IMG/VR virus record: IMGVR_UViG_3300025364_000003
Coordinates: 62,001-126,000 of that record
DNA length: 64,000 nt
Reading direction: 5' to 3' (one strand)
Of this stretch, positions 2,114-35,332 are shown in pieces. Under the pieces are notes generated by a model, which did no database searches, was not told the DNA's origin, and saw only the letters and a program-made list of their open reading frames with translations. Within the stretch, counting starts at the first letter, position 1. Each line of letters starts with the position of its first letter. The translations under genes were made by a program, and so were the position numbers.

Positions 2114-2144
2114 AGCATACATCGCCAAAAGCCTGAAGTAAACC
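2114..2144 (-). promoter_or_regulatory. Early-type promoter for the VWA gene (GG-TTTACT-17-TATGCT)
   Basis: Matches the recurrent motif with 17-nt spacing. Confidence 0.6.
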
Positions 2145-2194
2145 GGATTTTAATATTTTCGGGCTTTCCTTATAGGTCCCCTACCCTTTGGAAT

Positions 2195-2224
2195 ATATCG
2201 TGCGACTCCATATCGTGCGACTCC
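2195..2224. repeat. Tandem 2 x 15 nt ATATCGTGCGACTCC (TCGTRCGAC motif)
   Basis: Exact tandem copies in the intergenic region between divergent genes. Confidence 0.9.
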
Positions 2225-2285
2225 AGGTTTGGAAAAAATCCCAAAAGGGGTTCAAGAAAAGAAGAAATGGTGGTATGGTTTCATC

Positions 2286-2459
2286 ATGGACGATTTAGTC
2301 ATTCCAGTGTTTCGCCCGGCGAATCCTTGGTGTGGCAACGAACGTATTTCGTGCGACTCCAAAAAGCTGCTTCCGTTGGAGCAGGCAGTGGTAAACTACA
2401 TGGAATCCAATTTTGGAGACATCGATCTTCGAGATAAAAATGAAGTAGATGGTCATTGA
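2286..2459 (+). CDS. Small hypothetical protein (57 aa, leaderless)
   Basis: ATG 2286 lies 6 nt after TATGGT of a GG-TTCAAG-17 promoter. Confidence 0.6.
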   Translation: MDDLVIPVFRPANPWCGNERISCDSKKLLPLEQAVVNYMESNFGDIDLRDKNEVDGH

Positions 2460-2556
2460 CCATAAAACGAAGTTGTGGTTCACTCACAACTTTAGAGGTG
2501 CTACCTTCTTAGAGGTCATCCCACAGGGAAAAGGTTGAAAGGTAAGGAATAGATTT

Positions 2557-3876
2557 ATGAGTGTACTTTGTCAGATTGTCGGCATGGAAAGTCTCAAGCG
2601 GGTGCTTCGCCATGTTAGTTCCGATATCACCATCTGCGTACGTGGTCGCCACGCTGTCGGTAAGTCCGAGGCCGTCTACCAGGCAGCTTCCGAGATTCGG
2701 TCCGACTTCTACAAGGACCCAGCCAATTGTGCCAAGATGATGATGGCTCTTGGTGGAGAGGTTCGTACCGTTCTCAATGGCGAGAAGGTGTGGACGTCCG
2801 AGTGGAAGTACGAATACGGCATTCCCGTCGTCGAGCGCCGTCTTTCTCAGATGACGGAGGGTGATATCATCGGTCTCCCGGAGATGGTGCAGCTCACCGA
2901 CGGTGAGCGCCAGTGGAATTCTACGGCTTTCCGTCCGTGCGACTGGCTCATCCAGGCATGCCAGTTCCCTGTTATGCTCTTCCTCGACGAGCGCAACCGT
3001 GCTCTACAGGGCGTGAAGCAGGCTGTGTTCCAGCTAGCAGATTCCAAGGTGTTCTATGGTGCCAAGCTTCACAATGACACTCACATTGTCGTTGCTGAGA
3101 ACGTCGGCGAGAACTATCAGGTTGAACAGAGCGACCCGGCTGAGGTGTCTCGTTGGGTTACTTTTGAGCTGGAGCCGTCAGAGGACGAGTGGCTCAAGTG
3201 GGCAGAGGGCAAGTGTCATCTAGCAACCATCGAGTTCATTCGTGCAAACCCGAAGGCTCTAGAGCACAAGGGTACGTTCGAGGCGGACAAGAAGTACCCG
3301 GACCGTCGTTCTTGGTTCAAGCTCGATCAGGAGTGTCAGCGTCTTGGCATTTTTGATACCGACGATAAGGATCTTGTCGGCAAGGCAGGTCTTTTGTACC
3401 ACTTGGCCGGTGGTTTCATCGGGCCCGAGTGGGGTTCGAAGTTCACCAAGTTTGTCCAGGAGCGTGACCGTGAGATTAAGGCCACCGACATTCTGAATTC
3501 TTGGAAGAAGGCCAAGAAGAGGTTGTCGAAGGGTCAGAACGGCCAGATTTCCAACGAGCAGTACATCGAGGCGGTTCATAAGCTCGGTGACTGGTTGAAG
3601 GAAGAAAAGAACCAGCTTGATGTTCGTCAGGCCAAGAACTTCGCTGCTTTCATGCACGATTGTCCCCCGGAGCCCTGCATGAGTGCCTGGGCAATGCTTC
3701 AGAAGAACACGAAGAACCTTTTCAAGGTTCACCCCTACATCGAGAAGCTCATGGTCGCCCGTGCTTCTGGTCAGTCCATCACGGACCTCACTCCTCCGGA
3801 TCCGGACGAGGATGACAGTGTCAGCGATACTGAGGCTGCTCCAAAGCCTCGTAGCAAGCGAGGACGACGTCTGTAA
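2557..3876 (+). CDS. MoxR-family AAA+ ATPase
   Basis: Walker A GRHAVGKS, RLSQMTEGDIIGLP, Walker B LFLDERNRA, sensor region DPAEVSRW; SD AAGGA. Confidence 0.9.
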   Translation: MSVLCQIVGMESLKRVLRHVSSDITICVRGRHAVGKSEAVYQAASEIRSDFYKDPANCAKMMMALGGEVRTVLNGEKVWTSEWKYEYGIPVVERRLSQMTEGDIIGLPEMVQLTDGERQWNSTAFRPCDWLIQACQFPVMLFLDERNRALQGVKQAVFQLADSKVFYGAKLHNDTHIVVAENVGENYQVEQSDPAEVSRWVTFELEPSEDEWLKWAEGKCHLATIEFIRANPKALEHKGTFEADKKYPDRRSWFKLDQECQRLGIFDTDDKDLVGKAGLLYHLAGGFIGPEWGSKFTKFVQERDREIKATDILNSWKKAKKRLSKGQNGQISNEQYIEAVHKLGDWLKEEKNQLDVRQAKNFAAFMHDCPPEPCMSAWAMLQKNTKNLFKVHPYIEKLMVARASGQSITDLTPPDPDEDDSVSDTEAAPKPRSKRGRRL

Positions 3877-3897
3877 AATCCCAACCTCCCTTTCCCC

Positions 3898-3925
3898 GGC
3901 CGGGGGGCAATTCTGCCCCCCGGCC
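3898..3925 (+). terminator. 12-bp GC hairpin after the MoxR gene
   Basis: GGCCGGGGGGCA-ATTC-TGCCCCCCGGCC followed by CCTCTTT. Confidence 0.65.
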
Positions 3926-3951
3926 CCTCTTTGTCTGGATACCCCTTCATA

Positions 3952-3982
3952 TATTTCGTACGACTCGTATTTCGTACGACTC
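3952..3982. repeat. Tandem 2 x 16 nt TATTTCGTACGACTC(G) (TCGTACGA palindrome)
   Basis: Exact tandem copies upstream of the 3995 gene. Confidence 0.9.
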
Positions 3983-3994
3983 AGAAAAGAGGAT

Positions 3995-4297
3995 ATGAGA
4001 GATCTTGATGAAGCCATCGGAAAGTTTGTTCGTATTGGTTACAACACAGTTGAATACAACAACGTAACCAGACCACGAGCTTATCCTGCGTGGCTCCCAG
4101 GTGTGGCTTTGAAACCAAGTTCATCGGAACCATATCTTTTTATACCACATGGTTCGGTAGTTTTGTTGATTTCGGCAGGTTACGACTTTAGTAGCATTTT
4201 TTATGGCGAGCAGGTTTTATTTGTTCATTCTGGACATTTGAGCAAAATGACTTCTGAAGAAGTAGAGGAGTGGGCAAATGCCCAACCGCAAGTTTAA
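3995..4297 (+). CDS. Hypothetical protein, SH3-like beta-barrel family
   Basis: GAGGA SD before ATG 3995 (MRDLDEAIGKFVRI...IPHGSVVLL). Confidence 0.65.
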   Translation: MRDLDEAIGKFVRIGYNTVEYNNVTRPRAYPAWLPGVALKPSSSEPYLFIPHGSVVLLISAGYDFSSIFYGEQVLFVHSGHLSKMTSEEVEEWANAQPQV

Positions 4298-4827: not shown

Positions 4828-5045
4828 GATTTATTTTCAATGAAGTTTTTCATTCCGGTTACTTTATGCCGGAAAGACGAAATCTGGAAAACAGAAGAAG
4901 TCCTTAGGAGACTTTTGGGCGAAACTCGTGGATTTCAACCAGATTGATTCGGAAATTATCGACGATAACGTACGACTTCATAAGTAATAAATCGTACGAC
5001 ATGACCGAAGTTTACATCTAATCTCCAATATGGTATATTGGACAT

Positions 5046-5540
5046 ATGTCTAAGGGAATTAAAAATCCACGACTCACAGACCAGCCCTGGATGCTTCCTC
5101 AGCCGAGGAATGCAGTAAATACTCCAGATGAGCCGCTTACCCGAGGTCAGGAGTTAAAGGTAGATTGTATTGAGCACGGATTTGATTTTATTCCATGCTT
5201 TCCTAAACCGGGTGAAGAGCGTACGATTACAAGGATTGCTAATGGTACATGGATTATCTACCTTGGAACGGTAGAGTTTAATGGTGCGACTTGTATGGAG
5301 TTTATGACCAAAGAGGGAGAACAATTCTTCTATCTTGGTGATGGAGCCCTACGGCATCTTTTGAATATCCCGGTGAGGAAAATCAAGAAAGGCAACCCTT
5401 TTAGAAAAAAGAGCGGCTCCAAGGTTGGTCATCGGGGTGGTCAACGACATAAACCCCATGGTCGCAAGAAGCGTCCTGGGGAGGGATTGATCAATTTAGC
5501 TAGTGGCAAAGCTCGAACTAAAAAGGAACGTAGGAAATAA
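5046..5540 (+). CDS. Hypothetical protein with basic C-terminal tail (leaderless)
   Basis: TTTACA-17-TATATT-6-ATG promoter; IANGTWIIYLG beta-barrel-like core; K/R-rich tail. Confidence 0.75.
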   Translation: MSKGIKNPRLTDQPWMLPQPRNAVNTPDEPLTRGQELKVDCIEHGFDFIPCFPKPGEERTITRIANGTWIIYLGTVEFNGATCMEFMTKEGEQFFYLGDGALRHLLNIPVRKIKKGNPFRKKSGSKVGHRGGQRHKPHGRKKRPGEGLINLASGKARTKKERRK

Positions 5541-5755: not shown

Positions 5756-5761
5756 TCTACC

Positions 5762-6320: not shown

Positions 6321-6321
6321 T

Positions 6322-6543: not shown

Positions 6544-6696
6544 TCTCTTTAGCGTAACATATTCGTACGACTATTGTGAACCGAATTTCCCATAAACCAG
6601 ATGGTATCACCTTTGATACATCATCGGGCAGGGTTGCCGTTCCCCTCCTCCTGGAGTATTTTAAAGGTACCACTTCGGCTGACACTTTTAAACCGA

Positions 6697-6733: not shown

Positions 6734-6753
6734 CTAAAGGGTATCACTCAGGA

Positions 6754-7852: not shown

Positions 7853-8214
7853 GTTTCCCTCTTTCCTTTCGAGGCGACGCCGCCCCCTGATGTTGAATCG
7901 AATATAACTTATTCGTTCCGTGATTTAAACCGTTTGTCGGATTTTCTTTGTGACAGCCAGGTGACAGCCAAAATGGCGGCTGACCTGCTCGCTGTCCAGA
8001 AGAACGAATATGACATATTCCTTCAGGTATGTGAACCGGATGGCGGGGAAATTTGTAAGTTATTGAGATCGCTGAAGAATGCAGAAAAAATCCTAAAAGG
8101 AGTTCATACCCATGGATACCGTTGTTATTCTCTAACCATTGACGGGCCCTAGGGGGGCCGCAAGGCAAAACCAACGGAAACCAAACAAAACTTTGTGAGA
8201 AAAAGGTAGGAATC

Positions 8215-8748
8215 ATGACTCAGGATCGACTTCGTAGCACGGGCCGCAAGCCCACTCTCGACGTGACCGGCATCCAGGCGCTCCTGGAGCGCTACATGGA
8301 CGGCAGCAACGTCTCCATCTCCACCCTCGCCGAGGAGCAGAGCCTCACCACGGCCACCGTCCGCAAGTACCTCAAGGCGGCAGGACTCACCCTGCCCCGA
8401 GGCCGAGCCGCTCTCAAGCCCCGTGAGGTGATCAGCGTGCGCACCCTCATGAACCGTATGTCCGTGGAGGATCTTCTCGGTTCGGGCCGTGTGGAGCTTC
8501 TGCGCCGCCGCCTGGAGCTGGGTCAGAGCATGACCAGCCTCGCCACCGAGTTCGGCCTCAGCCGTGACCGGATCCGCAAGTTCCGGGACGAGTCGGGTCT
8601 GGCCCCGGAGGTCAGTGCGGAGGCCGAGGCGCCCGAGAGCCCCGAGGAGCCCACGGTCGAGGAGTCGGCCGAGGAGTCGGCCGAGGAGGCGGTGGCCGAG
8701 ACCACCGAGGATGCCATGGAGACGGCCGAAAGCACCGAGCGGGTCTGA
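8215..8748 (+). CDS. Tandem-HTH protein with sigma4-like C-terminal HTH and acidic tail (paralog 1)
   Basis: HTH1 ISTLAEEQSLTTATVRKYL; HTH2 MTSLATEFGLSRDRIRK; paralog of 27402..27878. Confidence 0.8.
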   Translation: MTQDRLRSTGRKPTLDVTGIQALLERYMDGSNVSISTLAEEQSLTTATVRKYLKAAGLTLPRGRAALKPREVISVRTLMNRMSVEDLLGSGRVELLRRRLELGQSMTSLATEFGLSRDRIRKFRDESGLAPEVSAEAEAPESPEEPTVEESAEESAEEAVAETTEDAMETAESTERV

Positions 8749-8915
8749 GCCAGACTTAGCTGAAAACTAAGAAAGCTTGAAGCTAGAAAACTAAGAAAAA
8801 AGGACCCTTGGTCGAAAGGCCAAGGGTTCGTTGTGTTTAACACTTGATAATAGTTCTTGATAGTTTTATTATAAAAGCTGTTCAGTAGTTGGACGTCCTG
8901 TGATAGATTTGTACT

Positions 8916-9926
8916 ATGGCAAGATCACGAAGAATTTCCAGAAAGAAGACTCCCGAGGTTGTGATTGCCGAGGGTGTTCTAACGAAAACAATTCCTGGAG
9001 ACCTTATCGATAGATTTGAGGTGCCAGAAGGCACTCGTGTTAAAATTGCACGTATTATCAATACGCCGATCGGACTACGTTTTCGTATCATTAATACGAC
9101 CAGGTGGATCCCCCAGGACAGTATCAACTGTGATTTCGATCATAATCTAATCGTCGATTATGTAAAAATCGCAAATGAAAACAGAAACAGGAAATTGACT
9201 CAGTCTGGGGACGGCTTTAACTCTAAAGGGTACAAACCTGATAAGGAGTTTGTTAGAACTGACAGTGTCTCAAGAAGGAGACATGGTAAACAAGGAAGGA
9301 CTAAAACCATGGATAAGAAAGACCTAAAAGATGCTATTGTAGCACTAACTACCGGGGACCGTGTCTCTGTGACGTTTCTTAGCACAATGCCTGGCGGTGC
9401 TTCAAACACCCGTTATGATGGCATTCGTGGCTTTGCTGGCAAGACCGTTGAGGCGACTCTTGTTGAGACGAAGAAGGGACGTGGCAAGGGCGGTTCCCAG
9501 CTGATGGTTCTCAAGACCGATGATGGTGAGAATTTTACGACTGGCACCCCACACTCTGATGTGATTCTGAACTTCACTACTCCTGCGGGTATGGTTGGTC
9601 ATGAGTCCGAGGCGGATGCTCCGAAGTCGTTCGAGACCAATGCTGGTCAGGCAGCTGAGTTGAAGGAGCAGTTCAAGAACCTCGTGGGCACTGTTGGTGC
9701 CACTGTCCGTGTTCAGTCCACCGAAAGTGAATACACGGGTGATTTCACGGTAACCGAAGTGGAGCAGCTCCGTGGCCGACACGGTCAGATTAGACTCCAT
9801 CTACAGGGTGACGATGGTCGGAACTTTACGCTCTGGAGCTACCGTCACAGTGGTGTGGTTACCAGTTTTGAAGTCCTTACTGAGGGCACCACACAGTCTG
9901 CATCTACGAGCACCGAGGCTGCTTGA
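8916..9926 (+). CDS. Hypothetical protein with duplicated beta-barrel domains (second start likely ATG 9309)
   Basis: Strong SD before 9309; internal repeat TGDRVSV..GRGKGG..TDDGENFT versus VGATVRV..LRGRHG..GDDGRNFT. Confidence 0.7.
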   Translation: MARSRRISRKKTPEVVIAEGVLTKTIPGDLIDRFEVPEGTRVKIARIINTPIGLRFRIINTTRWIPQDSINCDFDHNLIVDYVKIANENRNRKLTQSGDGFNSKGYKPDKEFVRTDSVSRRRHGKQGRTKTMDKKDLKDAIVALTTGDRVSVTFLSTMPGGASNTRYDGIRGFAGKTVEATLVETKKGRGKGGSQLMVLKTDDGENFTTGTPHSDVILNFTTPAGMVGHESEADAPKSFETNAGQAAELKEQFKNLVGTVGATVRVQSTESEYTGDFTVTEVEQLRGRHGQIRLHLQGDDGRNFTLWSYRHSGVVTSFEVLTEGTTQSASTSTEAA

Positions 9927-10197: not shown

Positions 10198-10200
10198 AAT

Positions 10201-12977: not shown

Positions 12978-13478
12978 TTCCTGATCATCGTCCTCGTCCT
13001 GGACGTATTTGGTGGAAAAATCCTCCTGAAGGATTTTGCTCTTGAACTCGATGATACATCATCGCCCAGGACCGCCGTTGCCCGCCTCATGATGTAAAAA
13101 TAGGATACCACATGGGCATCCTGTTTTGAACTCATTAACGGATTTTGCGGACAAGAACCTCGTGGAAATCAAAACACCTCGATCACGAGGACGTAGCGGT
13201 CGCTGTGCCTGGTATAGAGCTTGCTCTTGGCGTGAGCCTCAGAACGAGCCTTGGTACGCCACCAGTGCTTGACGCCATCGATGCTATAGTGTAGTTCGAA
13301 CATTTCACACTCCCGTAAGATGTGCGAGAATCGTTGCCGTGGTACAGGGGTCGAACGACCCCAACCGCCACATGAGTTTAAACATCCAGAGTCGCATCCT
13401 TTCTTTTCCTCTCATTAGTCCTTATAAGGTAGCACAGCTAGAGGAAGATGTAAACCTATTTTAGGATATTGGTGATTC

Positions 13479-14092: not shown

Positions 14093-14099
14093 GTTTTCC

Positions 14100-14988: not shown

Positions 14989-15075
14989 TCGCTATCTCCT
15001 CTTTCCTTGATATGCTACGAATATAGCATATTGCCAGAGGGGTTTGAACCTATTAGCAAAAGGTTTGGGTTACAG

Positions 15076-15739: not shown

Positions 15740-15902
15740 AAGCGTGTAGAAGTTGCGACCCACAGAGTCTACACCCTCTGTGCATGTCCAGCAGTGTCGG
15801 TGGTGGCCATTTGTAGTGCGGGCCTGTTAGGAGGCAACCGCCGGGGGACATTATTAGTTTAGCAGGAATTAGCTTGAATATGAACCCCATTGGGGAATTT
15901 AG

Positions 15903-18105: not shown

Positions 18106-18804
18106 TCACTCTCCAATGGAGAAACGCAAGCGCAAGACCCTCTCTTCTCTCGGAGAAAGAGTGCGAAGCAACTGTTTTACGATATTGGCCTGAGACTCAG
18201 ACTCCAACTGCTCCTGGGCAGATGAAACCTCGGTATCTTCGATAAAATCGCCAAGAGAAGCATCCCCCTCTTCTCCAATGCTCATATCAAGCGACAGAGG
18301 ATTTTTGATATATTCAAAAATTCGTACGACCTTATCTTTCGGCAGCTCCAAGAAAGCGGAGAGTTCTTCTGGAGAAGGTTCGGAGCCGTTGACCTCCATC
18401 ATGAGCCGAATGGCCTTACGGAGTCGGCCAATGGTTTCCTGCATATGCACAGGAATACGAATGGTGCGAGCTTTATCTTGAAGGGCTCGACCAATCGCCT
18501 GACGAATCCAGTGGGTTGCGTAAGTAGAAAAACGGAATCCCTTGGTGTGATCGAACTTCTCTACTGCTCGCATGAGCCCGATGTTACCCTCCTGAATGAG
18601 GGCCATGAAGTCCATGCCTCGACCACGGTAGCGCTTTGCAATAGAAATAACCAGACGAAGATTCGACTCGACCATTTCGTTTCGAGCACGATCACCGTCT
18701 GGTCCACCTTTGAGTACCCGCTTGGCGAGCATAACCTCGCCCTCTCGGGTGAGAAGGTTGTCCTTCATTTTGTTGATATACACGCTTGTGGTAGTTTTGG
18801 TCAT
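18106..18804 (-). CDS. RpoD-derived sigma factor A, ending before region 4.2
   Basis: Regions 1.2 (LLTREGEV), 2 ([40 protein letters not shown]), 3 ([18 protein letters not shown]) and 4.1 ([13 protein letters not shown]), then IGE-stop. Confidence 0.92.
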
Positions 18805-19150: not shown

Positions 19151-19559
19151 TGTTGCCTCCCATTTCCTTCAATACTAGCATGAAGTCGTCCGGGAGTGAA
19201 CCGATTAGGATCATTTTCGAGACTTCTCGCTGTAGCTGAATCAGCCTCTCAGCCTCAGGAAGATTTTCGCCCTTCTTGCACAGCTCGATTGCTTGTCCAA
19301 TCGAAATCCTGGTCTCATGGAGGATCTTCCTCCGCAAAACCATATCGAGTTGAGCAGGCGTCGGGTTACTGTCGCCCTTCGTCTTGTTGCAAGGCAAACA
19401 AGAGATAACAAGGTTCCACGCCCGGTGAGGACCACCCTTGGACTTGGGGATCACGTGGTCCACCGTCTTGGAGTCCCAAGTCAGAGACTCCCCACAGTAG
19501 AAACAACGTCCCTTGTCTCGCTTCCAGAGCGTGCGCTTGACCTTTAGTGAGGCCGACAC
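19143..19559 (-). CDS. HNH endonuclease
   Basis: CFYCG...TVDHVIPKSKGG...NLVISCLPCNKTKG. Confidence 0.92.
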   Translation of the reverse strand: MSASLKVKRTLWKRDKGRCFYCGESLTWDSKTVDHVIPKSKGGPHRAWNLVISCLPCNKTKGDSNPTPAQLDMVLRRKILHETRISIGQAIELCKKGENLPEAERLIQLQREVSKMILIGSLPDDFMLVLKEMGGNNG

Positions 19560-19915: not shown

Positions 19916-20174
19916 TTTTCATATCGATCTCGCCGATGAGATCGTGCATCTCTTCCAGCTCTTCCAGGGTACAGAACAGGTTAAACCCCGAGCGGTAACG
20001 GAGCTCCTGAAAACGGAGCGAGTGCTCCGTTTGGATACGAACCATTCGGAGCGGCTGTCCCTTATTGATCCCGGAGGTCATCGTGCCAACATGGCACACC
20101 GTCGAGGTGTTGCCGTAGTCGTACGACTCCGGAGCATCGGTAAAGCGGATGAAAACCTTGTCTTCGTTGTTCAT
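19899..20174 (-). CDS. Hypothetical protein (leaderless)
   Basis: GG-TTCATT-17-TATATT-6-ATG promoter. Confidence 0.75.
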   Translation of the reverse strand: MNNEDKVFIRFTDAPESYDYGNTSTVCHVGTMTSGINKGQPLRMVRIQTEHSLRFQELRYRSGFNLFCTLEELEEMHDLIGEIDMKIARDC

Positions 20175-20188
20175 GTTCTGAATATACC

Positions 20189-20362
20189 TTATTCGGAGTT
20201 AGAAATGAACCGAATATGAATTTTGTCGTAGGCTTTCTTGGCCTGCTTCAGGGTGGTGACAATTCCCTCCCTGGCTTGAGTGGCAACAATCACCCTGCTG
20301 AAGAGTTCCCGACGTTTGATCGGATCCTTGAGGATCTCACGGATATTGACTCGCTGCCTCAT
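20189..20362 (-). CDS. Small hypothetical protein
   Basis: ATGA overlap with the upstream stop at 20359-20361. Confidence 0.6.
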   Translation of the reverse strand: MRQRVNIREILKDPIKRRELFSRVIVATQAREGIVTTLKQAKKAYDKIHIRFISNSE

Positions 20363-20808: not shown

Positions 20809-20966
20809 GGTTCCCATATTAGTAAATAAGTCATCAGGTGTGAACCGAATATGGATTTTATCCATGAATCAGACCCATATAGAAAAATACTGTTGTCCCC
20901 ATTTGGTGACCGGCCTTTTTATTTAATTCGGTGCAAACTGAGGAAAGCCCGTGATAACTTAGAATC

Positions 20967-23452: not shown

Positions 23453-23491
23453 TAGGTTCACAACCAGGCTTTGGCCTGATATATTAAGACC

Positions 23492-23656
23492 ATGGCCAAG
23501 CGAAACAAGAAGAACGTCTCGGACGTGAAGCGACGCAGTGCCGCTGCCGTGGCCGCTATCCTCAAGACTGGTGCTGGTAAGCACGGGGACCGTCGCTTGA
23601 AGCGGATGAAGACCCGTGCGGCCCAGAAGCGGGCTGCCTTCCGAGACTGGAGGTGA
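23492..23656 (+). CDS. Very basic 54-aa protein (MAKRNKK...GAGKHGDRRLKR...)
   Basis: Below the ORF-track cutoff; leaderless GG-TTCACA-17-TATATT-6-ATG promoter; stop overlaps the next start. Confidence 0.75.
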   Translation: MAKRNKKNVSDVKRRSAAAVAAILKTGAGKHGDRRLKRMKTRAAQKRAAFRDWR

Positions 23657-23853
23657 GCATTACTGAACGGGAAGAAGAAGCCTTCAAGAAGGGCTACGAG
23701 CGCTGTCGGCTGGATATGGCCCGAGAGCTGGGTCAACTCATTGCGTATTACTACAACAAAGGTCAGACCAATGGTGGTGATGCGCTCCGTCATGCTAGCA
23801 CCGTGCTGCGAGCTGTGAAGCCTGGACAGAAGCCTTGGAATCCAGATATTTGA
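23653..23853 (+). CDS. Small helical protein
   Basis: GTGA overlap; FKKGYE motif. Confidence 0.65.
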   Translation: MSITEREEEAFKKGYERCRLDMARELGQLIAYYYNKGQTNGGDALRHASTVLRAVKPGQKPWNPDI

Positions 23854-23879
23854 ACCGATTAATAATCGGTTCAAATATC
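23845..23879. repeat. Perfect 16-bp inverted repeat containing back-to-back GGTTCAAA elements
   Basis: GATATTTGAACCGATT-AAT-AATCGGTTCAAATATC. Confidence 0.9.
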
Positions 23880-23907
23880 GAGAAATTCGGGATAAGCTAA
23901 ATTTAAG

Positions 23908-24243: not shown

Positions 24244-24508
24244 TACTAGTATTTGGGTTCACATTCATCTTTACAAGCGCACCACCAAGCGCATTCAGAA
24301 CTTGAATTCTGAGCTTCGCAGGCTTCGTGCCAAGGCTAAGGCTATGAAGCCGGGTCTTGACGACATCCATGCCTTGGAGGAGATGTATCCCGAAGAAAAG
24401 GCTATCATTTGGGGGCGTACCGAATACATCTGAGGTATCAAATATGCAGTTAGCCGAATTTTCTTGAAATAGGTTCAGAATCCAACAAATATAGGACATA
24501 TTAAGAAC

Positions 24509-25910: not shown

Positions 25911-26126
25911 GTTTAGGTTGGGCCTCATCAGCCCATAGTAGGGGTGGCGAGTTCCCTATGAACAAGTGAGGTGATGCTCACAAAAAAAGCCCCTAGCCTC
26001 GGAGAGGCCGGCGGTGGGAGCCGTAGCGGGACCCGTGGGGCCTGAAAAGGTGACGAAGCGGTACCGTACCCACAATTCTATCCATATTAGGTTCAAACCC
26101 CAAGGGGGATAGGATATTCTAGGACC

Positions 26127-26815: not shown

Positions 26816-26872
26816 CCCGAAAAAAAGAAAAAGGCGGTTCAGAAAATAACCGCCCCATGCTATAACAAGAAC

Positions 26873-27184
26873 ATAGGCAAGAGGCTAACCCAAGGAAGGC
26901 AGGGCCGCACCATTGGACAAGTGACACCTAGCTAGCTTCGTTGTTCTCGTCGAGCTAGTATTAGGACACCCGAGAGGGCCAGTAAAACAAGCCCCCATAA
27001 GTTACCTACCCCATTAGGGATGGCAGGGGGTGCAAGCGAGGACTCGGGGAGAGCCAAATGGCCTCGGCTCTCCCTTAAAGGAACCGGCCAAAGGTTATGG
27101 GTCTAAGTGCTAGGTAAAAGACCTGAGGCGGTGGGACGTTGAACGTCCCCGGAGAGCACTCAAGCTAGGGTCTGCCCAGTCTAC
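26873..27184 (+). ncRNA. Candidate ~310-nt structured ncRNA co-transcribed ahead of tRNA-Ala
   Basis: Promoter GG-TTCAGA-17-TATAAC but no ORF; 5'/3' end pairing and several strong internal stems. Confidence 0.6.
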
Positions 27185-27257: not shown

Positions 27258-27401
27258 TTTAAGATGAACCTCAAAAAATTGATAATCGGTTCATAATCCT
27301 GACCAAGTCTGTGATTCTTAGAATCATGGAGGTTGAGGCTAGCTCCTAAAAAGCCTCCCAACAACCAACCAAGTTCACAGAGAAACCAAAGGAAACAAAT
27401 C

Positions 27402-27878
27402 ATGCCCAAGCTCACTTCCACCGGTCGCAAGCCCGCTCTCGATCTCACCGGCGTCGAGTCCCTTCTCGGTCGCTACTTCTCGGAGGACCAGCCCGGCGTC
27501 GAGGCCCTCGCCAGCGAGTTCGAGATCACCCCGGCCACCGTCCGCAAGTACCTCAAGCTCGCCCTCGGCAGCCTTCCCCGTGGCCGTGCGGCCCTGCTCC
27601 CCCGTGAGCCCCGCAACGTCAAGGTGCTCATGAACGGCATCTCGACCGAGGATCTTCTCGGTGCCGGCCGGGTCGAGCTTCTCCTGCGTCACCGTGAGGC
27701 CGGCGTCAGCCTGACCGCCCTCGCCAGCGAGTTCGGGATCAGTCGTGACCGGGTGACCAAGCTCGTCCGGGCCCACGAGCCGGAGAGCGAGCCGGAGGTC
27801 GCCGAGGCGTCGCCGGAGCCGGAGAGCGTCCAGGTGCCCGATTCGGAGCCGGTCTGCCTCGACGAGGCGGTGGCCTGA
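27402..27878 (+). CDS. Tandem-HTH protein with sigma4-like C-terminal HTH and acidic tail (paralog 2)
   Basis: STGRKPALDLTG, ATVRKYLK, LPRGRAAL.PRE, LLG.GRVELL, LTALASEFGISRDRV shared with 8215..8748. Confidence 0.8.
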   Translation: MPKLTSTGRKPALDLTGVESLLGRYFSEDQPGVEALASEFEITPATVRKYLKLALGSLPRGRAALLPREPRNVKVLMNGISTEDLLGAGRVELLLRHREAGVSLTALASEFGISRDRVTKLVRAHEPESEPEVAEASPEPESVQVPDSEPVCLDEAVA

Positions 27879-27907
27879 CACCAGCCAAGGTCTTAGCATT
27901 GGCCGTA

Positions 27908-27946
27908 GCCCCCTTCTCCCTGACCGGAGAAGGGGGTTTTTCTTTT
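27908..27946 (+). terminator. Intrinsic terminator
   Basis: GCCCCCTTCTCC/GGAGAAGGGGGT stem followed by TTTTCTTTT. Confidence 0.85.
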
Positions 27947-27987
27947 ATTCGGTACAAACCCAGTCTCGGATATGAGATATTAGAACC

Positions 27988-28560: not shown

Positions 28561-28605
28561 AATATTCGGTTCACTAGGCTAGCGGATTTTGGTATATTAA
28601 AGACT

Positions 28606-29796
28606 ATGACGACGTTGGTACAGAAGTTCCTCCGTGAGCGCTCGCTGGCCGAGCTTGAGGCCGAGCACGGTGTCAAGGCTCGTGTGGCCGGGCACAAGTT
28701 CTCGCTCAACTACGATCAGATCGAGGCAAAGGACAGCGATCCGCTGGCACAGGAGTGCCGTGGCTTGATCCTGACGCCCGTTCAGGGTTCGATCGTGACG
28801 GAGGCTCCGCTTGGAGAGACCCGAATTCTGGCCCGTCCGTTCAACCGTTTCTTTAATCTGGGCCAGGAGGCTGCTGCCCCGGTCGACCTCGATCACCCGG
28901 AGACTTGTTTCTACGAGAAGATGGATGGAACGTTGACGATCCTCTACTTCGACGATGTTGTGGAGAAGTGGCATGTTGCCACCCGTGGGGTGCCGGAGGC
29001 CGATCTCCCGATCGATGGTTTCGGGCAGTACACCTTTCGGACGCTTTTCGAGCACGCCTGCCGTGATACCACTGGTCGTGACTTCAAGGATTTCGTTCGT
29101 TACTTGGATGTGCAGAGCACGTACATCTTCGAGCTGACGACGCCGATGAACCGTATCGTGGTTGATTATCAGGATTACAAGATCACCCTGTTGGGTGCTC
29201 GTGCCCGAGAGACCGGGGTGGAGTTTGATCCGGTGGACCTGGCACCGGTGCTTGAGGTGCCTCACGCTCCGGTGTACCGATTCGGCTCGTTGCAGGCAAT
29301 GGTGGATTTTGTGTCATCCCGTAACCCCCAGGACCACGAGGGCATCGTGGTTTGTGACCCCTCGTATCGTCGAATCAAGGTCAAGAACGCTGGCTATCTT
29401 GCCTTGAACAAGGTTCGGGACAGTGTGCTCAGTTCGCCCCGTGGGCTCGTGGAGTTGCTTCTTTTGGAGAAGCTCGACGATGCTCTGCCTCTGTTTCCTG
29501 ACCACGTTGTGGAGTGAGCTGAGAAGCTCCGAGATGCCTTCCGTGTACTGGTTCAGGATTTCCGCAAGGATTACCTAATCTGCCAAGAGGAGGCCGATCG
29601 GGGTTCCCCGGATGCACACCGCAAGTCTTTCGCTCTGGCGGTGCAGGCTCGGAAGCTTTGGATGGCTCCAATGATGGACGTGTACCAGGGCAAGGCTGAC
29701 GATCTTGTGAGCTGGATCAAGAGCCGGCGCCAGGTCGACGGTGGTTGGCCTAACAGCTTCTTGGATCAGGTTCTCCGGCAGCTAGAAAGCAAGTGA
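28606..29796 (+). pseudogene. T4 Rnl1-like RNA ligase interrupted by an in-frame TGA at 29515-29517
   Basis: ECRGL, FNRFFN, motif I YEKMDG, FEL, EGIVV, KVKN..Y; frame stays open 92 codons after the TGA to TGA 29794-29796. Confidence 0.8.
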
Positions 29797-29847
29797 ATAA
29801 GGTATAATGGGGTTCAAATCCGGGCCCCATTATTTTATAATAAAACC

Positions 29848-30021: not shown

Positions 30022-30096
30022 ATCCAGAAAATCCCATAAAGGGTTTAAATCTCTCGTCGATTATCGTATATTCAAGAGTGTTGGGAGATCACGAGA

Positions 30097-31469: not shown

Positions 31470-31475
31470 GAGGGG

Positions 31476-31501
31476 AAGGGGCCTCCGGGCCCCTTTTTTA
31501 T
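31476..31501 (+). terminator. Intrinsic terminator
   Basis: AAGGGGCC-TCCG-GGCCCCTT followed by TTTT. Confidence 0.85.
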
Positions 31502-31946: not shown

Positions 31947-32035
31947 CCTCCTGGGAGGGCCAAAGTTTTTTCCCATAAGGGTTTAGACCTGGCCCTAAAT
32001 CTGTTATTCTAAAAACAATCGAGGGAGCACAAAAG

Positions 32036-32752: not shown

Positions 32753-32815
32753 AGGAATATCTGAATAACCGAAAATCGGTTCATAATCCCACCCTAGACT
32801 GGTATTCTTTAAACC

Positions 32816-33016: not shown

Positions 33017-33070
33017 CAGTGGAAGGGGAAACAAAAGGAAGAGCACAAAGAATTCAGCTCGTGTTATCAC

Positions 33071-33268: not shown

Positions 33269-33359
33269 ACATCCTAACAGGATAAGGAAAATAGGCGGCT
33301 AACCACATTTTTTCGATAATCGGTTCATAAAAGAGGTCTACTAGGGTATTCTCTTAACC

Positions 33360-33881
33360 ATGGACAACACGCACCACGGTGCCCCCAAGGGCACGCACAA
33401 GCTCTCCACCGCCGCCGTTCTCCCCTTCCTCCTCGCCGGTCGCTCGCTGGTGACCGTCCTGAATCGCACCACCGATGGTCACTACACCTACCGGATCCAG
33501 GCCCCCGGCAAGACCGCCAAGGAGCGCCGAAACGCCTCCATCCTCTTCGTGTCCGTTCTCACTGGACCGGACAACGGCGAGCGTGGCTCGTACACCTACA
33601 TCGGAATCCTCATCCGTCAGACCGGGGAGTTCAAGCTCACGGCGAAGAGTCGCCTTCCCAAGAGCAGCGCTTCTGTTGCCGGCTTCGACTGGCTCTGCCG
33701 TCAGGCTCGCCGGGAGAACCTCGACAGCTTCCCGCACGTGGAAGTCCGCCACCACAACGAGTGTGGCGCCTGCGCCCGAACCCTCACGGTCCCCGAGTCG
33801 ATCGACACCGGCCTCGGTCCAATCTGCGCCAAGCGCCTCGGCGCCCATTGGGCCAGGAACGACCAGCGCAAGGTCGCTTGA
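33360..33881 (+). CDS. DUF6011-domain protein (leaderless)
   Basis: C-terminal CGACARTLTVPESIDTGLGPICA; N-terminal TYRI..FVSVLTGPDN. Confidence 0.85.
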   Translation: MDNTHHGAPKGTHKLSTAAVLPFLLAGRSLVTVLNRTTDGHYTYRIQAPGKTAKERRNASILFVSVLTGPDNGERGSYTYIGILIRQTGEFKLTAKSRLPKSSASVAGFDWLCRQARRENLDSFPHVEVRHHNECGACARTLTVPESIDTGLGPICAKRLGAHWARNDQRKVA

Positions 33882-33975
33882 CCCAACATGGGGACCCCTA
33901 AGGGGTCCCCGCCCTTCAGGGCTTTTCTTTTGCTAATCGGTTCAAAAGGCAGTCCGGATCGGATATATTAGAACC

Positions 33976-34209
33976 ATGAGCACAACGACCTATCCCGCCG
34001 CCGAGTCCGCCGCCAAGGCCATGCAGCTTCCGGTCACCGTCTGCAAGGTGACCCGTAAGTTGTACAACAGGACGGTGCCTGCCCTCAACGAGGAGCTGGC
34101 CGCCTCCCTGATCGCTTCCGCCGGGTTCCCTTGCGGAACCCCGGCCCACGAGGCCGCCATGGGTGTCCTTCGGGCTCGGTTCGAGTCCTACCTTTACAAC
34201 AGTTTCTAA
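33976..34209 (+). CDS. Small hypothetical protein (leaderless)
   Basis: GG-TTCAAA-17-TATATT-6-ATG; flanked by GGGGACCCC/GGGGTCCCC hairpins. Confidence 0.75.
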   Translation: MSTTTYPAAESAAKAMQLPVTVCKVTRKLYNRTVPALNEELAASLIASAGFPCGTPAHEAAMGVLRARFESYLYNSF

Positions 34210-34303
34210 GGCCCAGGGGGTCCCCAAACGGGGACCCCAACCTTTCTCGAAAAAAATTGTCTAATAGGTTCATAAAAGGGTCCAGCTAGGGTAATATCAA
34301 AAT

Positions 34304-35023
34304 ATGCCGATGACGAAGACCGCTACCGACGCCTACCTCGCTCTCCTCACCGCTGACCTCCTCACCCGTGAGGATGAGGTCGCCCTCGCTGCCATCGCCC
34401 AGGACACCGAACACCCCGAGTCCGAGAAGGCTCGTCAGGCCATGATCGAGGCCAACCTCCGGCTGGTGGTCCACGTGGCGAAGAAGTACCGTGGCCGTGC
34501 TTCCAAGCTCGGCGTGTCTTACATCGATCTCATTCAAGAGGGTAACATCGGTCTCATGACCGCTGTCGAGAAGTTCGATGGTGACCGTGGGCACCGCTTC
34601 TCCACCTATGCCGTTCACTGGATCCGTCAGTCCATCGGTCGTGCCCTCCAGAACAAGGCGAGCACGATCCGGGTCCCGGTTCACGTCCACGAGGTCGTGG
34701 GCAAGCTCAAGTCCGCCGCTCGGCTCATCGGTGAGATGAACGGTGAGGGTCCGACCCCGGCTGAGGTCGCTTCCTTTCTGGAGCTTCCCGAGGACAAGGT
34801 TACTCGCCTGTGGCAGTACGTCCGCCCCTGCGATTCCCTCGATCGTCAGGTGGGTTCCGAGGATGGTGACTCCGTGCTCGGTGACTTCGTGGAGGACACC
34901 GGCAACAGCCTGACCGATGCGGTCGACGATGCCGCTTCCAAGTCGCTCGTGCACACCGTGCTCCGCACCCTGACTCCCCGTGAGGAAAAGGTGCTCAAGC
35001 TCCGGTTCGCCGTCGGCGCCTGA
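34304..35023 (+). CDS. RpoD-derived sigma factor B, ending before region 4.2
   Basis: [71 protein letters not shown] then AVGA-TGA-TAG; GG-TTCATA-17-TAATAT-6-ATG promoter. Confidence 0.92.
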
Positions 35024-35044
35024 TAGCAACCCGTCCAGAACTAA

Positions 35045-35072
35045 GCCGCTCTCCGGGGCGGCTTTTCTTTTT
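35045..35072 (+). terminator. Intrinsic terminator right after sigma B
   Basis: AGCCGCTC-TCCG-GGGCGGCT followed by TTTCTTTTT. Confidence 0.85.
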
Positions 35073-35113
35073 AATCGGTTCACATTATCATCAATTTGGG
35101 GCAATCTCTAACC

Positions 35114-35332
35114 ATGCGATACACCCTCTTCATCAAGTACCCCGACGTCCCCTACGACTTCTACGAGGGCAATGACCTCGACTCCCACATGAAGGAAGCC
35201 AAGCGCCTGGCCAAGCAGCACCCCAAGGCCACCATCACCGTCTGTGACAGGCAGACCGATACCATGCTCTTCTCCAGGGAGAACGGTAAGGGGGGAGAGT
35301 GCAAGTTCTCCCTGTCCGGCATGTTCAACTAA
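35114..35332 (+). CDS. Small hypothetical protein (leaderless)
   Basis: GG-TTCACA-17-CAATCT-6-ATG at 35114. Confidence 0.7.
   Translation: MRYTLFIKYPDVPYDFYEGNDLDSHMKEAKRLAKQHPKATITVCDRQTDTMLFSRENGKGGECKFSLSGMFN

What the first reader, a model, noticed from the sequence alone, without database searches (positions are those of the whole stretch)
2137..35114. About 35 copies of one non-canonical promoter, mostly producing leaderless mRNAs
Seen: the motif GG-TT(C/T)ANA-N17-(T/C/G)ANNNT recurs about once per kb across the left arm. In ~24 cases the start codon sits 6-7 nt after the -10, usually as ACC|ATG or ATC|ATG, with no Shine-Dalgarno. Where a leader exists, the same AAC(C)|AT signature still appears at the predicted TSS (8138, 26515, 26873), so it marks the TSS rather than a translation context. 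I saw no such array beyond 35.2 kb. Known: leaderless mRNAs initiate on 70S ribosomes and are less dependent on SD and S1. Inference: a monocistronic, leaderless early regulon could stay translatable while host SD-led translation is impaired.
Basis: partly seen in the sequence, partly recalled or inferred. Interest (0 to 1): 0.8.

Follow-up and report, generated by a model that had tools for sequence, protein, structure and literature searches.

The report
Phage promoter array with leaderless genes
A 35-kb, GC-rich block of small genes in an uncultured T4-like giant phage from a salt lake carries about 40 copies of one bacterial-type promoter with an unusual -35 box. About half of them sit so close to the start codon that the mRNA should have no leader, a new variation on the known T4-type arrays of early promoters.

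Summary
A weight matrix finds 41 sites at 0.5-35.4 kb, 1 weak site to the right, 0 in the 9.4 kb to the left, and 0.1 in shuffles. All sites point toward the downstream gene or tRNA.

Twenty sites have ATG 6-7 nt after the -10 hexamer (1.2 expected), and 19 of these open an ORF of at least 35 aa. Three more genes do the same behind other -35 variants.

The geometry is that of a sigma-70 promoter: an AT-rich upstream stretch, GGTTCAnA, a 17-bp spacer, TGn, then TATATT or TATTCT.

Related uncultured phages carry the same motif. Four orthologous gene pairs keep the leaderless layout. Two pairs switch between leaderless and an SD-containing leader while the protein N-terminus stays the same.

The best reading is an array of T4-type early promoters, partly in PeSL-like terminator-promoter cassettes, read by host RNA polymerase. 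No RNA data exist, so the transcription starts are inferred.

The claims "monocistronic" and "escape from impaired SD translation" are not supported. About half the units have SD-like leaders, and terminators are few.

The block also encodes two RpoD-like sigma factors that lack region 4.2. This keeps open a rival in which a phage factor reads the GGTTCA box.

The parts
2114..2144 (-). promoter copy, leader 61 nt to ATG 2052 (DUF2201/VWA protein, 502 aa)
   Evidence: 14.3 bits; orthologous site in L032
2249..2279 (+). promoter copy, ATG 2286 at +6 (57 aa)
   Evidence: 15.4 bits; -35 GGTTCAAG
5011..5039 (+). variant promoter (-35 TTTACA), ATG 5046 at +6 (164 aa)
   Evidence: L036 orthologue has TTGACA and is also leaderless
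6551..6582 (-). promoter copy (18-bp spacer), ATG 6543 at +7 (73 aa)
   Evidence: 23.4 bits
6664..6694 (-). promoter copy in tandem, 120 nt upstream of ATG 6543, behind a bidirectional hairpin
   Evidence: hairpin z -5.1
7901..7931 (-). promoter copy, 48-nt SD-like leader to the KaiC-like ATPase (ATG 7852)
   Evidence: 32.4 bits; conserved in L036
8007..8037 (-). promoter copy in tandem upstream of 7931, no ORF of its own
   Evidence: 25.2 bits
8101..8131 (+). promoter copy (AGTTCATA), predicted start A 8138, 76-nt A/C-rich leader to the two-HTH protein (ATG 8215)
   Evidence: start context conserved in L036 at 9870
8881..8909 (+). variant promoter (-35 TTCAGT), ATG 8916 at +6 (336 aa)
   Evidence: same -35 and layout in L036
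11280..11310 (-). promoter copy behind a hairpin; downstream gene uncertain (ATG 11081 is 198 nt away)
   Evidence: (29.0 bits)
13102..13132 (-). promoter copy, ATG 13090 at +11 (44 aa)
   Evidence: 30.7 bits
13426..13456 (-). promoter copy, ATG 13415 at +10 (36 aa)
   Evidence: 29.9 bits
15020..15050 (-). promoter copy, 31-nt leader to ATG 14988 (204 aa)
   Evidence: 37.1 bits (second-highest score)
15856..15886 (-). promoter copy upstream of tRNA-Glu (15739-15666)
   Evidence: 28.6 bits
16625..16655 (-). promoter copy upstream of tRNA-Lys and tRNA-Leu
   Evidence: 27.6 bits
16970..16999 (-). weaker copy (16-bp spacer, poor -10), 18-nt leader to ATG 16951
   Evidence: 20.5 bits
18811..18839 (-). 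variant promoter with consensus -35 TTGACA, ATG 18804 at +6 (sigma factor, 232 aa)
   Evidence: L036 orthologue has GGTTGAAA at the same place
19172..19202 (-). promoter copy, 21-nt SD-like leader to ATG 19150 (61 aa)
   Evidence: (19.8 bits)
20181..20211 (-). promoter copy, ATG 20174 at +6 (91 aa), followed by SD-led genes
   Evidence: (29.3 bits)
20816..20846 (-). promoter copy, ATG 20808 at +7 (63 aa); leftward member of the divergent pair
   Evidence: 28.0 bits
20930..20960 (+). promoter copy (GGTGCAAA), 102-nt leader; rightward member of the divergent pair
   Evidence: 21.0 bits
21491..21521 (+). promoter copy, ATG 21529 at +7 (DUF3228 protein, 196 aa)
   Evidence: L006 orthologue also leaderless
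23455..23485 (+). promoter copy, ATG 23492 at +6 (54 aa)
   Evidence: L036 orthologue has a 31-nt SD leader
23868..23898 (+). promoter copy, ATG 23908 at +9 (111 aa); its -35 is half of a 33-bp palindrome
24472..24502 (+). promoter copy, ATG 24509 at +6 (87 aa)
   Evidence: 31.5 bits
24786..24816 (+). promoter copy, ATG 24823 at +6 (105 aa)
   Evidence: 32.3 bits
25482..25511 (+). promoter copy (16-bp spacer), 24-nt SD leader to ATG 25536
26090..26120 (+). promoter copy, ATG 26127 at +6 (98 aa)
   Evidence: 36.1 bits
26477..26507 (+). promoter copy, predicted start A 26515, SD leader to ATG 26534 (Kyano_Gp96 family)
26836..26866 (+). promoter copy with -10 TATAAC, predicted start A 26873, about 310 nt non-coding then tRNA-Ala
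27288..27318 (+). promoter copy; the ATG at +7 opens only 7 codons, the real start of the two-HTH paralogue is ATG 27402
27951..27981 (+). promoter copy (GGTACAAA) behind a strong hairpin, ATG 27988 at +6 (190 aa)
28568..28598 (+). promoter copy (GGTTCACT), ATG 28606 at +7 (RNA ligase)
   Evidence: L006 orthologue has the same -35 but a 20-nt SD leader
29811..29841 (+). promoter copy, ATG 29848 at +6 (57 aa)
   Evidence: 19.5 bits; -10 TATAAT
30042..30072 (+). promoter copy, GTG 30078 at +5 (start uncertain)
   Evidence: 32.5 bits
30542..30572 (+). promoter copy, ATG 30579 at +6 (296 aa)
   Evidence: 35.5 bits
31510..31540 (+). promoter copy behind a hairpin, ATG 31547 at +6 (39 aa)
31980..32010 (+). 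promoter copy, 25-nt SD leader to ATG 32036 (238 aa)
32778..32808 (+). promoter copy, ATG 32816 at +7 (66 aa)
   Evidence: 34.2 bits
33322..33352 (+). promoter copy, ATG 33360 at +7 (DUF6011 protein, 173 aa)
   Evidence: (37.3 bits, highest score)
33939..33969 (+). promoter copy behind a hairpin, ATG 33976 at +6 (77 aa)
   Evidence: the ~94% identical relative in run X6 shows changes only in spacer and flanks
34267..34297 (+). promoter copy behind a hairpin, ATG 34304 at +6 (sigma factor, 239 aa, no region 4.2)
35077..35107 (+). last promoter copy, behind terminator 35043-35064, ATG 35114 at +6 (72 aa)

Best explanation
The window comes from an uncultured T4-like giant phage (contigs of 206-461 kb) found in hypersaline-lake metagenomes.

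Positions ~0.5-35.4 kb form a GC-rich island of small, mostly unknown genes. This is the counterpart of a T4 'hyperplastic region'. The genes are transcribed outward from a divergent promoter pair at ~20.9 kb, plus two rightward blocks.

The repeated motif is the island's promoter. It has an AT-rich, UP-like stretch (often AAAATCC..TAAT), a -35 box GGTTCAnA, a 17-bp spacer, TGn, a -10 TATATT or TATTCT, and a 6-7 nt discriminator ending in C. The next base is A.

I infer that the host RNA polymerase with its primary sigma factor reads these sites right after infection, as an early class like the ~40 T4 early promoters. That requires region 4.2 on the -35 box, region 2 and 3.0 on the TGn -10, and the alpha C-terminal domains on the AT tract.

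In about half the copies the promoter cassette abuts the ORF. The predicted +1 A is then the A of ATG, and the transcript is a leaderless mRNA translated from its 5'-terminal AUG. The other copies carry 18-120 nt leaders with SD-like purine tracts, or drive tRNAs.

A quarter of the copies sit directly behind a terminator hairpin. These form promoter-terminator cassettes like the PeSLs of T4-type phages.

Shown: the motif, its statistics, its orientation, its confinement to the island, and its conservation in relatives, including leaderless orthologues.

For: - Motif statistics and restriction to the island.
- ATG at +6/+7 in 20 of 41 sites against 1.2 expected, with pyrimidine at position 6 in 32 of 37 sites and A at position 7 in 24 of 37.
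- The same motif drives tRNAs and leadered genes.
- T4-like identity (gp20 portal, GroEL, closest portals in Microcystis and Flavobacterium myoviruses).
- Relatives L006/L028, L032, L036 and L034/35 carry the motif, with 20 sites in 20 kb of L036.
- Orthologous promoters carry GGTTGAAA or TTGACA in the same register as GGTTCAAA, which links the box to a normal -35.
- Leaderless layout is conserved in four orthologue pairs. Two pairs switch to an SD leader with the same N-terminus.
- Both phage sigma genes stop before the -35-reading region 4.2. Both lie behind these promoters, so a factor present before infection must fire them first.
- Hairpin-promoter cassettes.
- PeSL description, including -35 variants that differ between phage groups: PMC4122927.
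- Group-2 jumbo phages use host RNA polymerase plus their own sigma factors: PMC7824862.
Against: - No RNA data: no RNA run was listed, so no transcription start is mapped.
- The host is unknown, so its -35 preference cannot be compared.
- GG upstream is present in >90% of copies and C at hexamer position 3 in ~80%. A sigma that prefers TTGACA does not obviously explain this.
- One island gene (sigma-232) has a true TTGACA. This could mean two promoter classes exist.
- Several 'leaderless' ORFs are very short (36-66 aa) and have no homologues checked.
- Only ~1/4 of copies have the upstream stem-loop that defines a PeSL.
Confidence: 0.6

Rival explanations
1. The GGTTCA box is a private signal read by a phage factor, not by the host sigma. 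The reader could be one of the two paralogous two-HTH proteins (8215-8748, 27333-27878). It could act as an activator at -35, or supply in trans the DNA-reading part missing from the two region-4.2-less RpoD-like sigma factors (18106-18804, 34304-35023). The array would then be a delayed-early or middle class, analogous in logic to T4 MotA/AsiA sigma appropriation.
For: - Two truncated sigma paralogues and two two-HTH paralogues all lie inside the island and are syntenic in relatives.
- Some HTH homologues carry faint Sigma70_r4 hits.
- GG and C in the box are strongly conserved, which a TTGACA-preferring sigma does not explain.
- The sigma-232 gene has a consensus TTGACA promoter that host polymerase could fire first.
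- About a quarter of the boxes extend to a near-palindrome GGTT-N2-3-AACC, as expected for a dimeric binder.
Against: - All four candidate genes sit behind GGTTCA-type promoters themselves, so the class could not start itself.
- A profile search of the HTH family against PDB sequences gives only generic HTH hits (KorA E 0.013, RpoH E 0.5).
- The AF2 model (pLDDT 80.7) has no significant Foldseek match (best E 0.09).
- In L036 the box alternates with GGTTGAAA, and at an orthologous site with TTGACA, which fits an ordinary -35.
Confidence: 0.2
2. Leaderlessness is an adaptive device: the phage impairs SD-dependent or 30S-dependent initiation, and its own early mRNAs, which bind 70S ribosomes directly, keep being translated.
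For: - The concentration of 5'-AUG genes is far above chance and conserved in relatives.
- Established knowledge: leaderless mRNAs can initiate on 70S ribosomes without SD or S1 (review PMC9031893, listed).
- From my own knowledge, not checked here: Thermus phage phiYS40 was reported to combine leaderless phage mRNAs with changed initiation-factor levels (Sevostyanova 2007, cited in PMC12340547).
Against: - About half the island units, including the ATPases, both HTH regulators and many second genes, use SD-like leaders.
- Two orthologue pairs swap between leaderless and SD-led, as if the two were near-equivalent.
- Right-arm structural genes also rely on leaders, only about a third with a clear SD.
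- No nuclease, ADP-ribosyltransferase or initiation-factor homologue was seen among the 43 proteins scanned.
Confidence: 0.12
3. The repeats are not promoters. They could be a translation context (an AT-rich enhancer plus a Kozak-like ACC before ATG, as described for SD-poor hosts), a recombination or packaging repeat, or an archaeal BRE/TATA promoter given the hypersaline source.
For: - ACC precedes ATG in 10 of 20 leaderless sites.
- Right-arm genes often lack an SD.
- The sample is hypersaline, and haloarchaea use leaderless mRNAs.
Against: - Conservation is limited to two blocks 17 bp apart with a variable spacer. That is the signature of sigma-70 recognition, not of a copied repeat.
- The motif also precedes tRNAs and sits 18-120 nt from many start codons.
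- The blocks centre at -33 and -10, not at the archaeal -27.
- The genome has a T4 portal, bacterial-type sigma-70 genes and SD-like leaders.
Confidence: 0.03

Closest known systems
T4-type early promoters and PeSL (promoter-early stem-loop) cassettes of hyperplastic regions (Arbiol 2010, PMC2839356; Comeau 2014, PMC4122927)
   Same: - Dozens of near-identical sigma-70-type promoters with an AT-rich upstream part and a 17-bp spacer, concentrated in a block of small, variable, mostly unknown genes of a T4-like myovirus.
- The -35 hexamer is phage-group specific: TTTACW in T4/PST and TTGYVH in KVP40/nt-1.
- Some copies sit directly behind a terminator hairpin.
   Different: - The -35 is GGTTCAnA, with C at hexamer position 3.
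- Described PeSLs end in an SD plus start codon. Here half have no leader at all.
- Only ~1/4 have the stem-loop.
- The island is 10-15 GC points richer than the rest of the genome.
- A role in recombination was not tested.
Bacterial leaderless genes with the -10 element adjacent to the ORF (Deinococcus-Thermus, PMC12340547; mycobacteria, PMC4633059)
   Same: TANNNT lies 6-7 nt upstream of an ATG, there is no SD, and SD-led genes coexist in the same genome.
   Different: - In those bacteria it is a genome-wide host habit, and often no conserved -35 is reported.
- Here it is a phage island with a strongly conserved -35 and UP-like part.
- The host is unknown.
Leaderless phage mRNAs: lambda cI from PRM (Shean and Gottesman 1992) and Thermus phage phiYS40 middle/late genes (Sevostyanova 2007); both known to me only as references cited in PMC12340547, papers not read here
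   Same: Phage genes whose transcript starts at the A of AUG, made by host RNA polymerase.
   Different: - Lambda has a single such gene.
- phiYS40 (as I recall it) uses -35-less middle/late promoters in a non-T4-like phage.
- Here the class looks early, has a -35, and comprises about 20 genes.
T4 middle promoters (MotA box plus AsiA sigma appropriation)
   Same: A phage-specific box replaces the consensus -35 in front of a good TGn -10. The phage carries its own transcription factors in the same region.
   Different: - The MotA box (TGCTT) lies 12 +/- 1 bp from the -10. Here the spacing and register are those of a normal -35.
- No MotA or AsiA homologue was seen among the proteins scanned.

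Membership tests
sigma-70-type bacterial promoter | -10 hexamer TAnnnT, often preceded by TGn | tested here: met
   T, A and the final T are nearly invariant, and G at -14 is conserved.
sigma-70-type bacterial promoter | -35 hexamer resembling TTGACA, 17 +/- 1 bp upstream of the -10 | tested here: inconclusive
   - The spacing is met: 17 bp in 37 of 41 sites.
- The sequence TTCAnA matches 4 of 6, with a conserved C at position 3 and GG upstream.
- Relatives and orthologous sites carry TTGAAA or TTGACA in the same register.
sigma-70-type bacterial promoter | transcription starts at a purine 6-8 nt after the -10 and depends on the primary sigma holoenzyme | not testable with these tools
   Only the sequence context is seen (C then A at positions 6 and 7). 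No RNA run was listed and the host is unknown.
PeSL cassette of T4-type phages | many copies of a strong early-type promoter clustered in a hyperplastic region of a T4-like genome | tested here: met
   41 copies in 35 kb of small ORFs and none in the flanks. gp20 portal.
PeSL cassette of T4-type phages | stem-loop terminator immediately upstream of the promoter | tested here: not met
   Only 9-10 of 41 have a strong hairpin. The mean folding energy of the upstream 58 nt equals that of random island positions.
PeSL cassette of T4-type phages | Shine-Dalgarno and start codon at the 3' end of the cassette | tested here: not met
   In 19-22 units the ATG follows the -10 by 6-7 nt with no room for an SD. 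The rest do have SD-like leaders.
PeSL cassette of T4-type phages | copies lie at indel or gene-swap borders between close relatives | not tested
   The relatives fetched are too distant (41-84% protein identity) for breakpoint mapping.
bacterial leaderless gene | -10 element 6-7 nt upstream of an AUG that opens the ORF | tested here: met
   20 of 41 sites against 1.2 expected, 19 with an ORF of at least 35 aa. For most it is the first start codon of the ORF.
bacterial leaderless gene | protein really starts at that AUG | tested here: inconclusive
   Orthologue alignments begin at residue 1-5 for the RNA ligase, the DUF3228 protein, sigma-232 and the genes at 5046 and 8916. There are no proteomic or ribosome data.
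bacterial leaderless gene | mapped 5' end at the A of AUG | not testable with these tools
   No RNA run was listed.
T4 MotA-dependent middle promoter | MotA box TGCTT centred at -30, 12 +/- 1 bp from the -10, with MotA and AsiA encoded | tested here: not met
   The box sequence and spacing differ. No such family appeared among the 43 proteins scanned.
archaeal (haloarchaeal) BRE/TATA promoter with leaderless mRNA | TATA box centred near -27 with BRE upstream, in an archaeal virus | tested here: not met
   The conserved blocks centre at -33 and -10 with a fixed 17-bp spacer. The genome encodes a T4 gp20 portal and bacterial sigma-70 proteins.

The most novel reading that the evidence does not exclude
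The phage owns its promoter code. Its RpoD-like sigma factors, which end just before region 4.2, would work with a separately encoded two-HTH protein that reads GGTTCA as a private -35. This would be a split sigma. The resulting regulon would be translated largely without leaders, insulating both transcription and translation of about 40 units from host control.
Probability: 0.1. Interest if true: 0.85.

Novelty: new variant of a known kind. Interest (0 to 1): 0.5.

Why it matters
Arrays of early promoters are how T4-like phages take over a cell in the first minutes. This array shows that the same design exists in a distant, uncultured giant phage lineage, but with a different -35 code and with leaderless mRNAs for about half the units.

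If confirmed, it would be the largest set of leaderless early genes described for a T4-like phage. It would offer a natural series of about 40 promoters with one consensus for studying -35 recognition. It would also offer gene pairs that switch between leaderless and SD-led initiation.

The motif gives a practical handle for annotating start codons and early regions in this phage clade, where standard gene callers expecting an SD will misplace starts.

Tried and rejected
- Megablast of 3-8 kb pieces against 50,697 phage records found no match.
One run's contig spans 33000-36124, depths are equal on both sides, and a ~94% identical relative from a microbial mat has both sides. The join is therefore not a chimera. 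The assembly breaks are a G/C homopolymer tract and a 17-bp tandem repeat.
- Host identification through the phage GroEL in 185,579 species genomes returned only 41-44% identical hits in unrelated MAGs. This was uninformative, and the host remains unknown.
- Split-sigma idea: a profile of the HTH family against PDB sequences and the AF2 model against PDB folds gave nothing significant.
- A k-mer search for a shared promoter upstream of right-arm genes found none.
- Rfam found only the four tRNAs. The 312-nt stretch before tRNA-Ala folds no better than shuffles (z -1.0).
- Resemblance of GGTTCAAATCC to a tRNA T-arm: ARAGORN finds tRNAs only at the four known places, so the boxes are not tRNA remnants.
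- Stop-codon recoding as an explanation for the TGA inside the RNA ligase is rejected. TGA ends 12 of 20 island genes, and the orthologue has Arg at that position.
- The phiYS40 paper could not be opened.

Full report
**What the window is**

The right part (35.5-64 kb, 35-43% GC) is a tightly packed plus-strand block. It holds a T4 gp20-type portal interrupted by an intein with an HNH domain, and a GroEL.

The portal's nearest relatives among 50,697 phage records are Microcystis phage Mel-JY01 (42%), Flavobacterium 'immuto' phages (39%) and huge uncultured phages. No nucleotide match exists.

The same DNA is held at 98-99% of sampled words by five hypersaline-lake metagenome runs, and a ~94% identical relative occurs in microbial-mat runs. 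IMG/VR holds it on contigs of 206,528 and 460,987 bp. It is an uncultured T4-like giant phage, 'group 2' in the sense of PMC7824862. The host is unknown.

**The island**

Positions ~0.5-35.4 kb have 49-60% GC. The 9.4 kb to the left of the window and everything to the right have 35-46%.

The join at 35.4-36.2 kb is not an assembly chimera:
- One run's contig spans 33000-36124.
- Depths are equal on both sides in three runs.
- The mat relative has both sides.

It holds about 60 small ORFs with normal coding GC periodicity, four tRNA genes, and a few recognisable proteins:
- a DUF2201/VWA protein with a MoxR-like ATPase
- a KaiC/DnaB-like ATPase
- an amidoligase
- an RNA ligase
- HNH endonucleases
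- a Kyano_Gp96 family protein
- two two-HTH proteins
- two sigma factors

**Check of the observation**

27 of the matches lie in the island.

- an AT-rich upstream part, often AAAATCC followed by TAAT just before the box
- GGTTCAnA
- a non-conserved spacer
- T and G at -15/-14
- TATATT or TATTCT
- an A-rich discriminator ending in C, followed by A

A matrix scan allowing 16-18 bp spacers finds 41 island sites, one weak right-arm site, none in the left flank, and 0.1 per shuffled island. A 42nd copy at 26836 has TATAAC as its -10.

Every site points toward the following gene. Minus-strand copies run from 20.8 down to 6.5 kb, plus-strand copies from 20.9 to 35.1 kb, and there are plus-strand blocks at 2.2-5.8 and 8.1-10.2 kb. 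Transcription therefore diverges from a back-to-back pair at 20816-20960.

**Leaderless layout**

In 20 of 41 sites ATG begins 6 or 7 nt after the -10 (1.2 expected), and 19 of these open ORFs of 39-303 aa. For most it is the first possible start of the ORF.

At sites scoring at least 18 bits, the sixth base after the -10 is a pyrimidine in 32 of 37 and the seventh is A in 24 of 37. That is the usual -1/+1 context.

Three more genes have the same layout behind other -35 hexamers:

| Start codon | -35 hexamer |
|---|---|
| ATG 5046 | TTTACA |
| ATG 8916 | TTCAGT |
| ATG 18804 (minus strand) | TTGACA |

The remaining copies have leaders of 18-120 nt, several with purine tracts such as GGAAGGGAG or AAGGTAGG, or they precede tRNAs.

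It also occurs at 15050 and 31980, but not in most leadered copies.

**Comparative evidence**

Five related contigs were fetched through the RNA ligase, the DUF2201 protein and the HTH protein.

| Locus | Marker protein and identity | Motif result |
|---|---|---|
| L006/L028 | RNA ligase, 63% | same box |
| L032 | DUF2201 protein, 84% | same box |
| L036 | HTH protein, 59%, syntenic | 20 sites in 20 kb |
| L034/35 | HTH protein, 43% (soil-type sample) | weaker |

In L036 the box is GGTTCAAA in most copies but GGTTGAAA in four.

At orthologous genes:
- The DUF3228 gene is leaderless in both the window and L006.
- The sigma-232 gene is leaderless in both. Its -35 is TTGACA here and GGTTGAAA in L036.
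- The gene at 5046 is leaderless in both (TTTACA here, TTGACA in L036).
- The gene at 8916 is leaderless in both, with the same TGTTCAGT.
- The RNA ligase is leaderless here. In L006 it has the same GGTTCACT box followed by a 20-nt leader with AGGAG, and the same N-terminus.
- The gene at 23492 is leaderless here. In L036 it has a 31-nt AAGGAGG leader and a GTG start.

This shows three things:
- The ATGs are the real starts.
- The layout is maintained by selection in some genes.
- Leaderless and SD-led forms interconvert.

A more distant phage with a homologous sigma (L003) has leaderless genes behind TTGACA and TTGACT promoters.

**What it is**

The fixed 17-bp spacing, the TGn, the TAnnnT and the AT-rich upstream part are the anatomy of a promoter for a sigma-70-family holoenzyme. 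Its use in front of tRNAs and leadered genes rules out a pure translation signal.

The closest described system is the array of early promoters in the hyperplastic regions of T4-type phages. There the -35 hexamer also departs from TTGACA in a phage-group-specific way. A stem-loop terminator directly upstream forms the 'PeSL' cassette (PMC4122927).

Here 9-10 of 41 copies have such a hairpin (for example 27907-27938, 31472-31499, 33890-33930 and 35043-35064). The rest do not, and on average the upstream 58 nt fold no better than random island positions.

The described PeSLs end in an SD and a start codon, whereas half of these copies have no leader. I therefore file the array as a new variant of that kind, not as a member of the PeSL family in the strict sense.

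**Who reads it**

The island encodes two paralogous sigma factors, 232 and 239 aa long and 53% identical to each other. They align to E. coli RpoD residues ~371-565 and end a few residues after region 4.1. The helix-turn-helix of region 4.2, which reads the -35, is missing.

Region-4-less sigma factors of this length form viral clusters of 95 and 199 members in the ESM Atlas.

A conserved box at the -35 position needs a reader. The host primary sigma has one, and these phage sigmas alone do not. Both sigma genes, and both two-HTH genes, lie behind promoters of the family, so something present before infection must fire them.

This makes host sigma the most economical reader (confidence 0.6). 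The phage sigmas then most likely serve a later, -35-independent class.

The rival is a phage factor reading GGTTCA, possibly the two-HTH proteins completing the truncated sigmas. Two observations keep it alive: the unexplained invariance of GG and C, and the presence of one true TTGACA promoter in front of sigma-232.

The tests I could run were not significant. The sequence profile against PDB gave KorA at E 0.013 and RpoH at E 0.5. The AF2 model (pLDDT 80.7) against PDB folds gave a best E of 0.09.

**Why leaderless**

What can be said from sequence:
- The cassette simply abuts the ORF.
- The two initiation modes coexist in one island, and even in one gene family.
- The phage's late genes mostly have weak or no SD (about a third have a clear one).

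This points to a host in which SD-independent initiation is common, so that a 5'-AUG is a cheap and compact solution for one-gene cassettes.

It is weakened by the SD-led regulators in the same regulon.

'Monocistronic' is also too strong. About 21 promoters serve about 32 ORFs between 20.9 and 35.4 kb, and convincing terminators are few.

**Limits**

- No transcription start is mapped, because no RNA run was listed.
- Timing (early) is by analogy with T4.
- The host is unknown. The GroEL search in species genomes was uninformative.
- Several leaderless ORFs are very short and unverified.
- Only 73 kb of a 206-461 kb genome was seen.

**Verdict**

The leaderless architecture is supported by statistics and by orthologues. 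The functional story is not supported. The finding is a clear, tidy new variant of a known phage strategy, with a more novel but unproven possibility attached: a phage-owned -35 code read with truncated sigma factors.

Noticed in passing
window 500-35450 versus the flanks (left flank seen in L031): The promoter island has 49-60% GC. The DNA on both sides has 35-46%. The four phage tRNAs (Glu-UUC, Leu-UAA, Lys-UUU, Ala-UGC) read A/U-ending codons. This would fit a GC-rich host, early genes tuned to host codon usage, and AT-rich late genes helped by phage tRNAs.
   Followed up: partly
window 18106-18804 (-) and 34304-35023 (+): Two paralogous RpoD-like sigma factors (53% identical to each other) have regions 1.2-4.1 but end just before the -35-reading region 4.2. 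A terminator follows the second one. Viral clusters of the same truncated length exist in the ESM Atlas. L036 has a 253-aa orthologue without region 4.
   Followed up: partly
window 8215-8748 (+) and 27402-27878 (+): Two paralogous proteins (53% identical to each other) each have two helix-turn-helix units and an acidic tail. They are syntenic with the KaiC-like ATPase in relatives. Both have long A/C-rich leaders (repeats of AACCAA). Their structure has no significant match in the PDB.
   Followed up: partly
window 2198-2221, 2349, 3956-3980, 4969-5000, 5679, 6095, 6563, 18322, 20117-20128, 35356-35367: A second repeated motif, TCGTRCGAC(TC), occurs 13 times against 0.41 expected. It often forms tandem pairs just upstream of promoters. 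It occurs twice as the perfect 12-bp palindrome AGTCGTACGACT, and one of these marks the right edge of the island. A copy is conserved upstream of the orthologous promoter in L036. It looks like an operator for a dimeric regulator. Its partial likeness to the T7 promoter core is probably chance.
   Followed up: partly
window 28606-29796 (+), stop at 29515-29517: The RNA ligase gene carries one in-frame TGA, after which the frame stays open for 93 more codons that still align to relatives. The L006 orthologue has Arg at that position. TGA is a normal stop elsewhere in the window, so this is a nonsense change or a read-through site, not recoding.
   Followed up: partly
window 35370-35480 and 36129-36179: At the island's right border there are runs of 8-13 G or C arranged as imperfect hairpins, and then three tandem copies of a 17-bp unit. 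Short-read assemblies of two runs break at the first of these places, and all three hypersaline-lake runs laid break at the second.
   Followed up: partly
window 23846-23878: A perfect 33-bp palindrome is made of two back-to-back -35 boxes with their TAAT parts. Only the plus-strand half has a usable -10.
   Followed up: no
window 26873-27184 (+): About 310 nt with no ORF of 60 aa or more lie between a promoter copy and tRNA-Ala. There is no Rfam match, and the stretch folds no better than shuffles.
   Followed up: yes
window 50972-54199 (+): The portal gene (gp20 family) is interrupted by an intein with an HNH endonuclease domain.
   Followed up: no
window 9229-9309 (+): A weak promoter copy lies inside the 336-aa gene, 49 nt before an internal ATG. 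The L034 homologue begins exactly at that ATG, so a shorter isoform from an internal start is possible.
   Followed up: no
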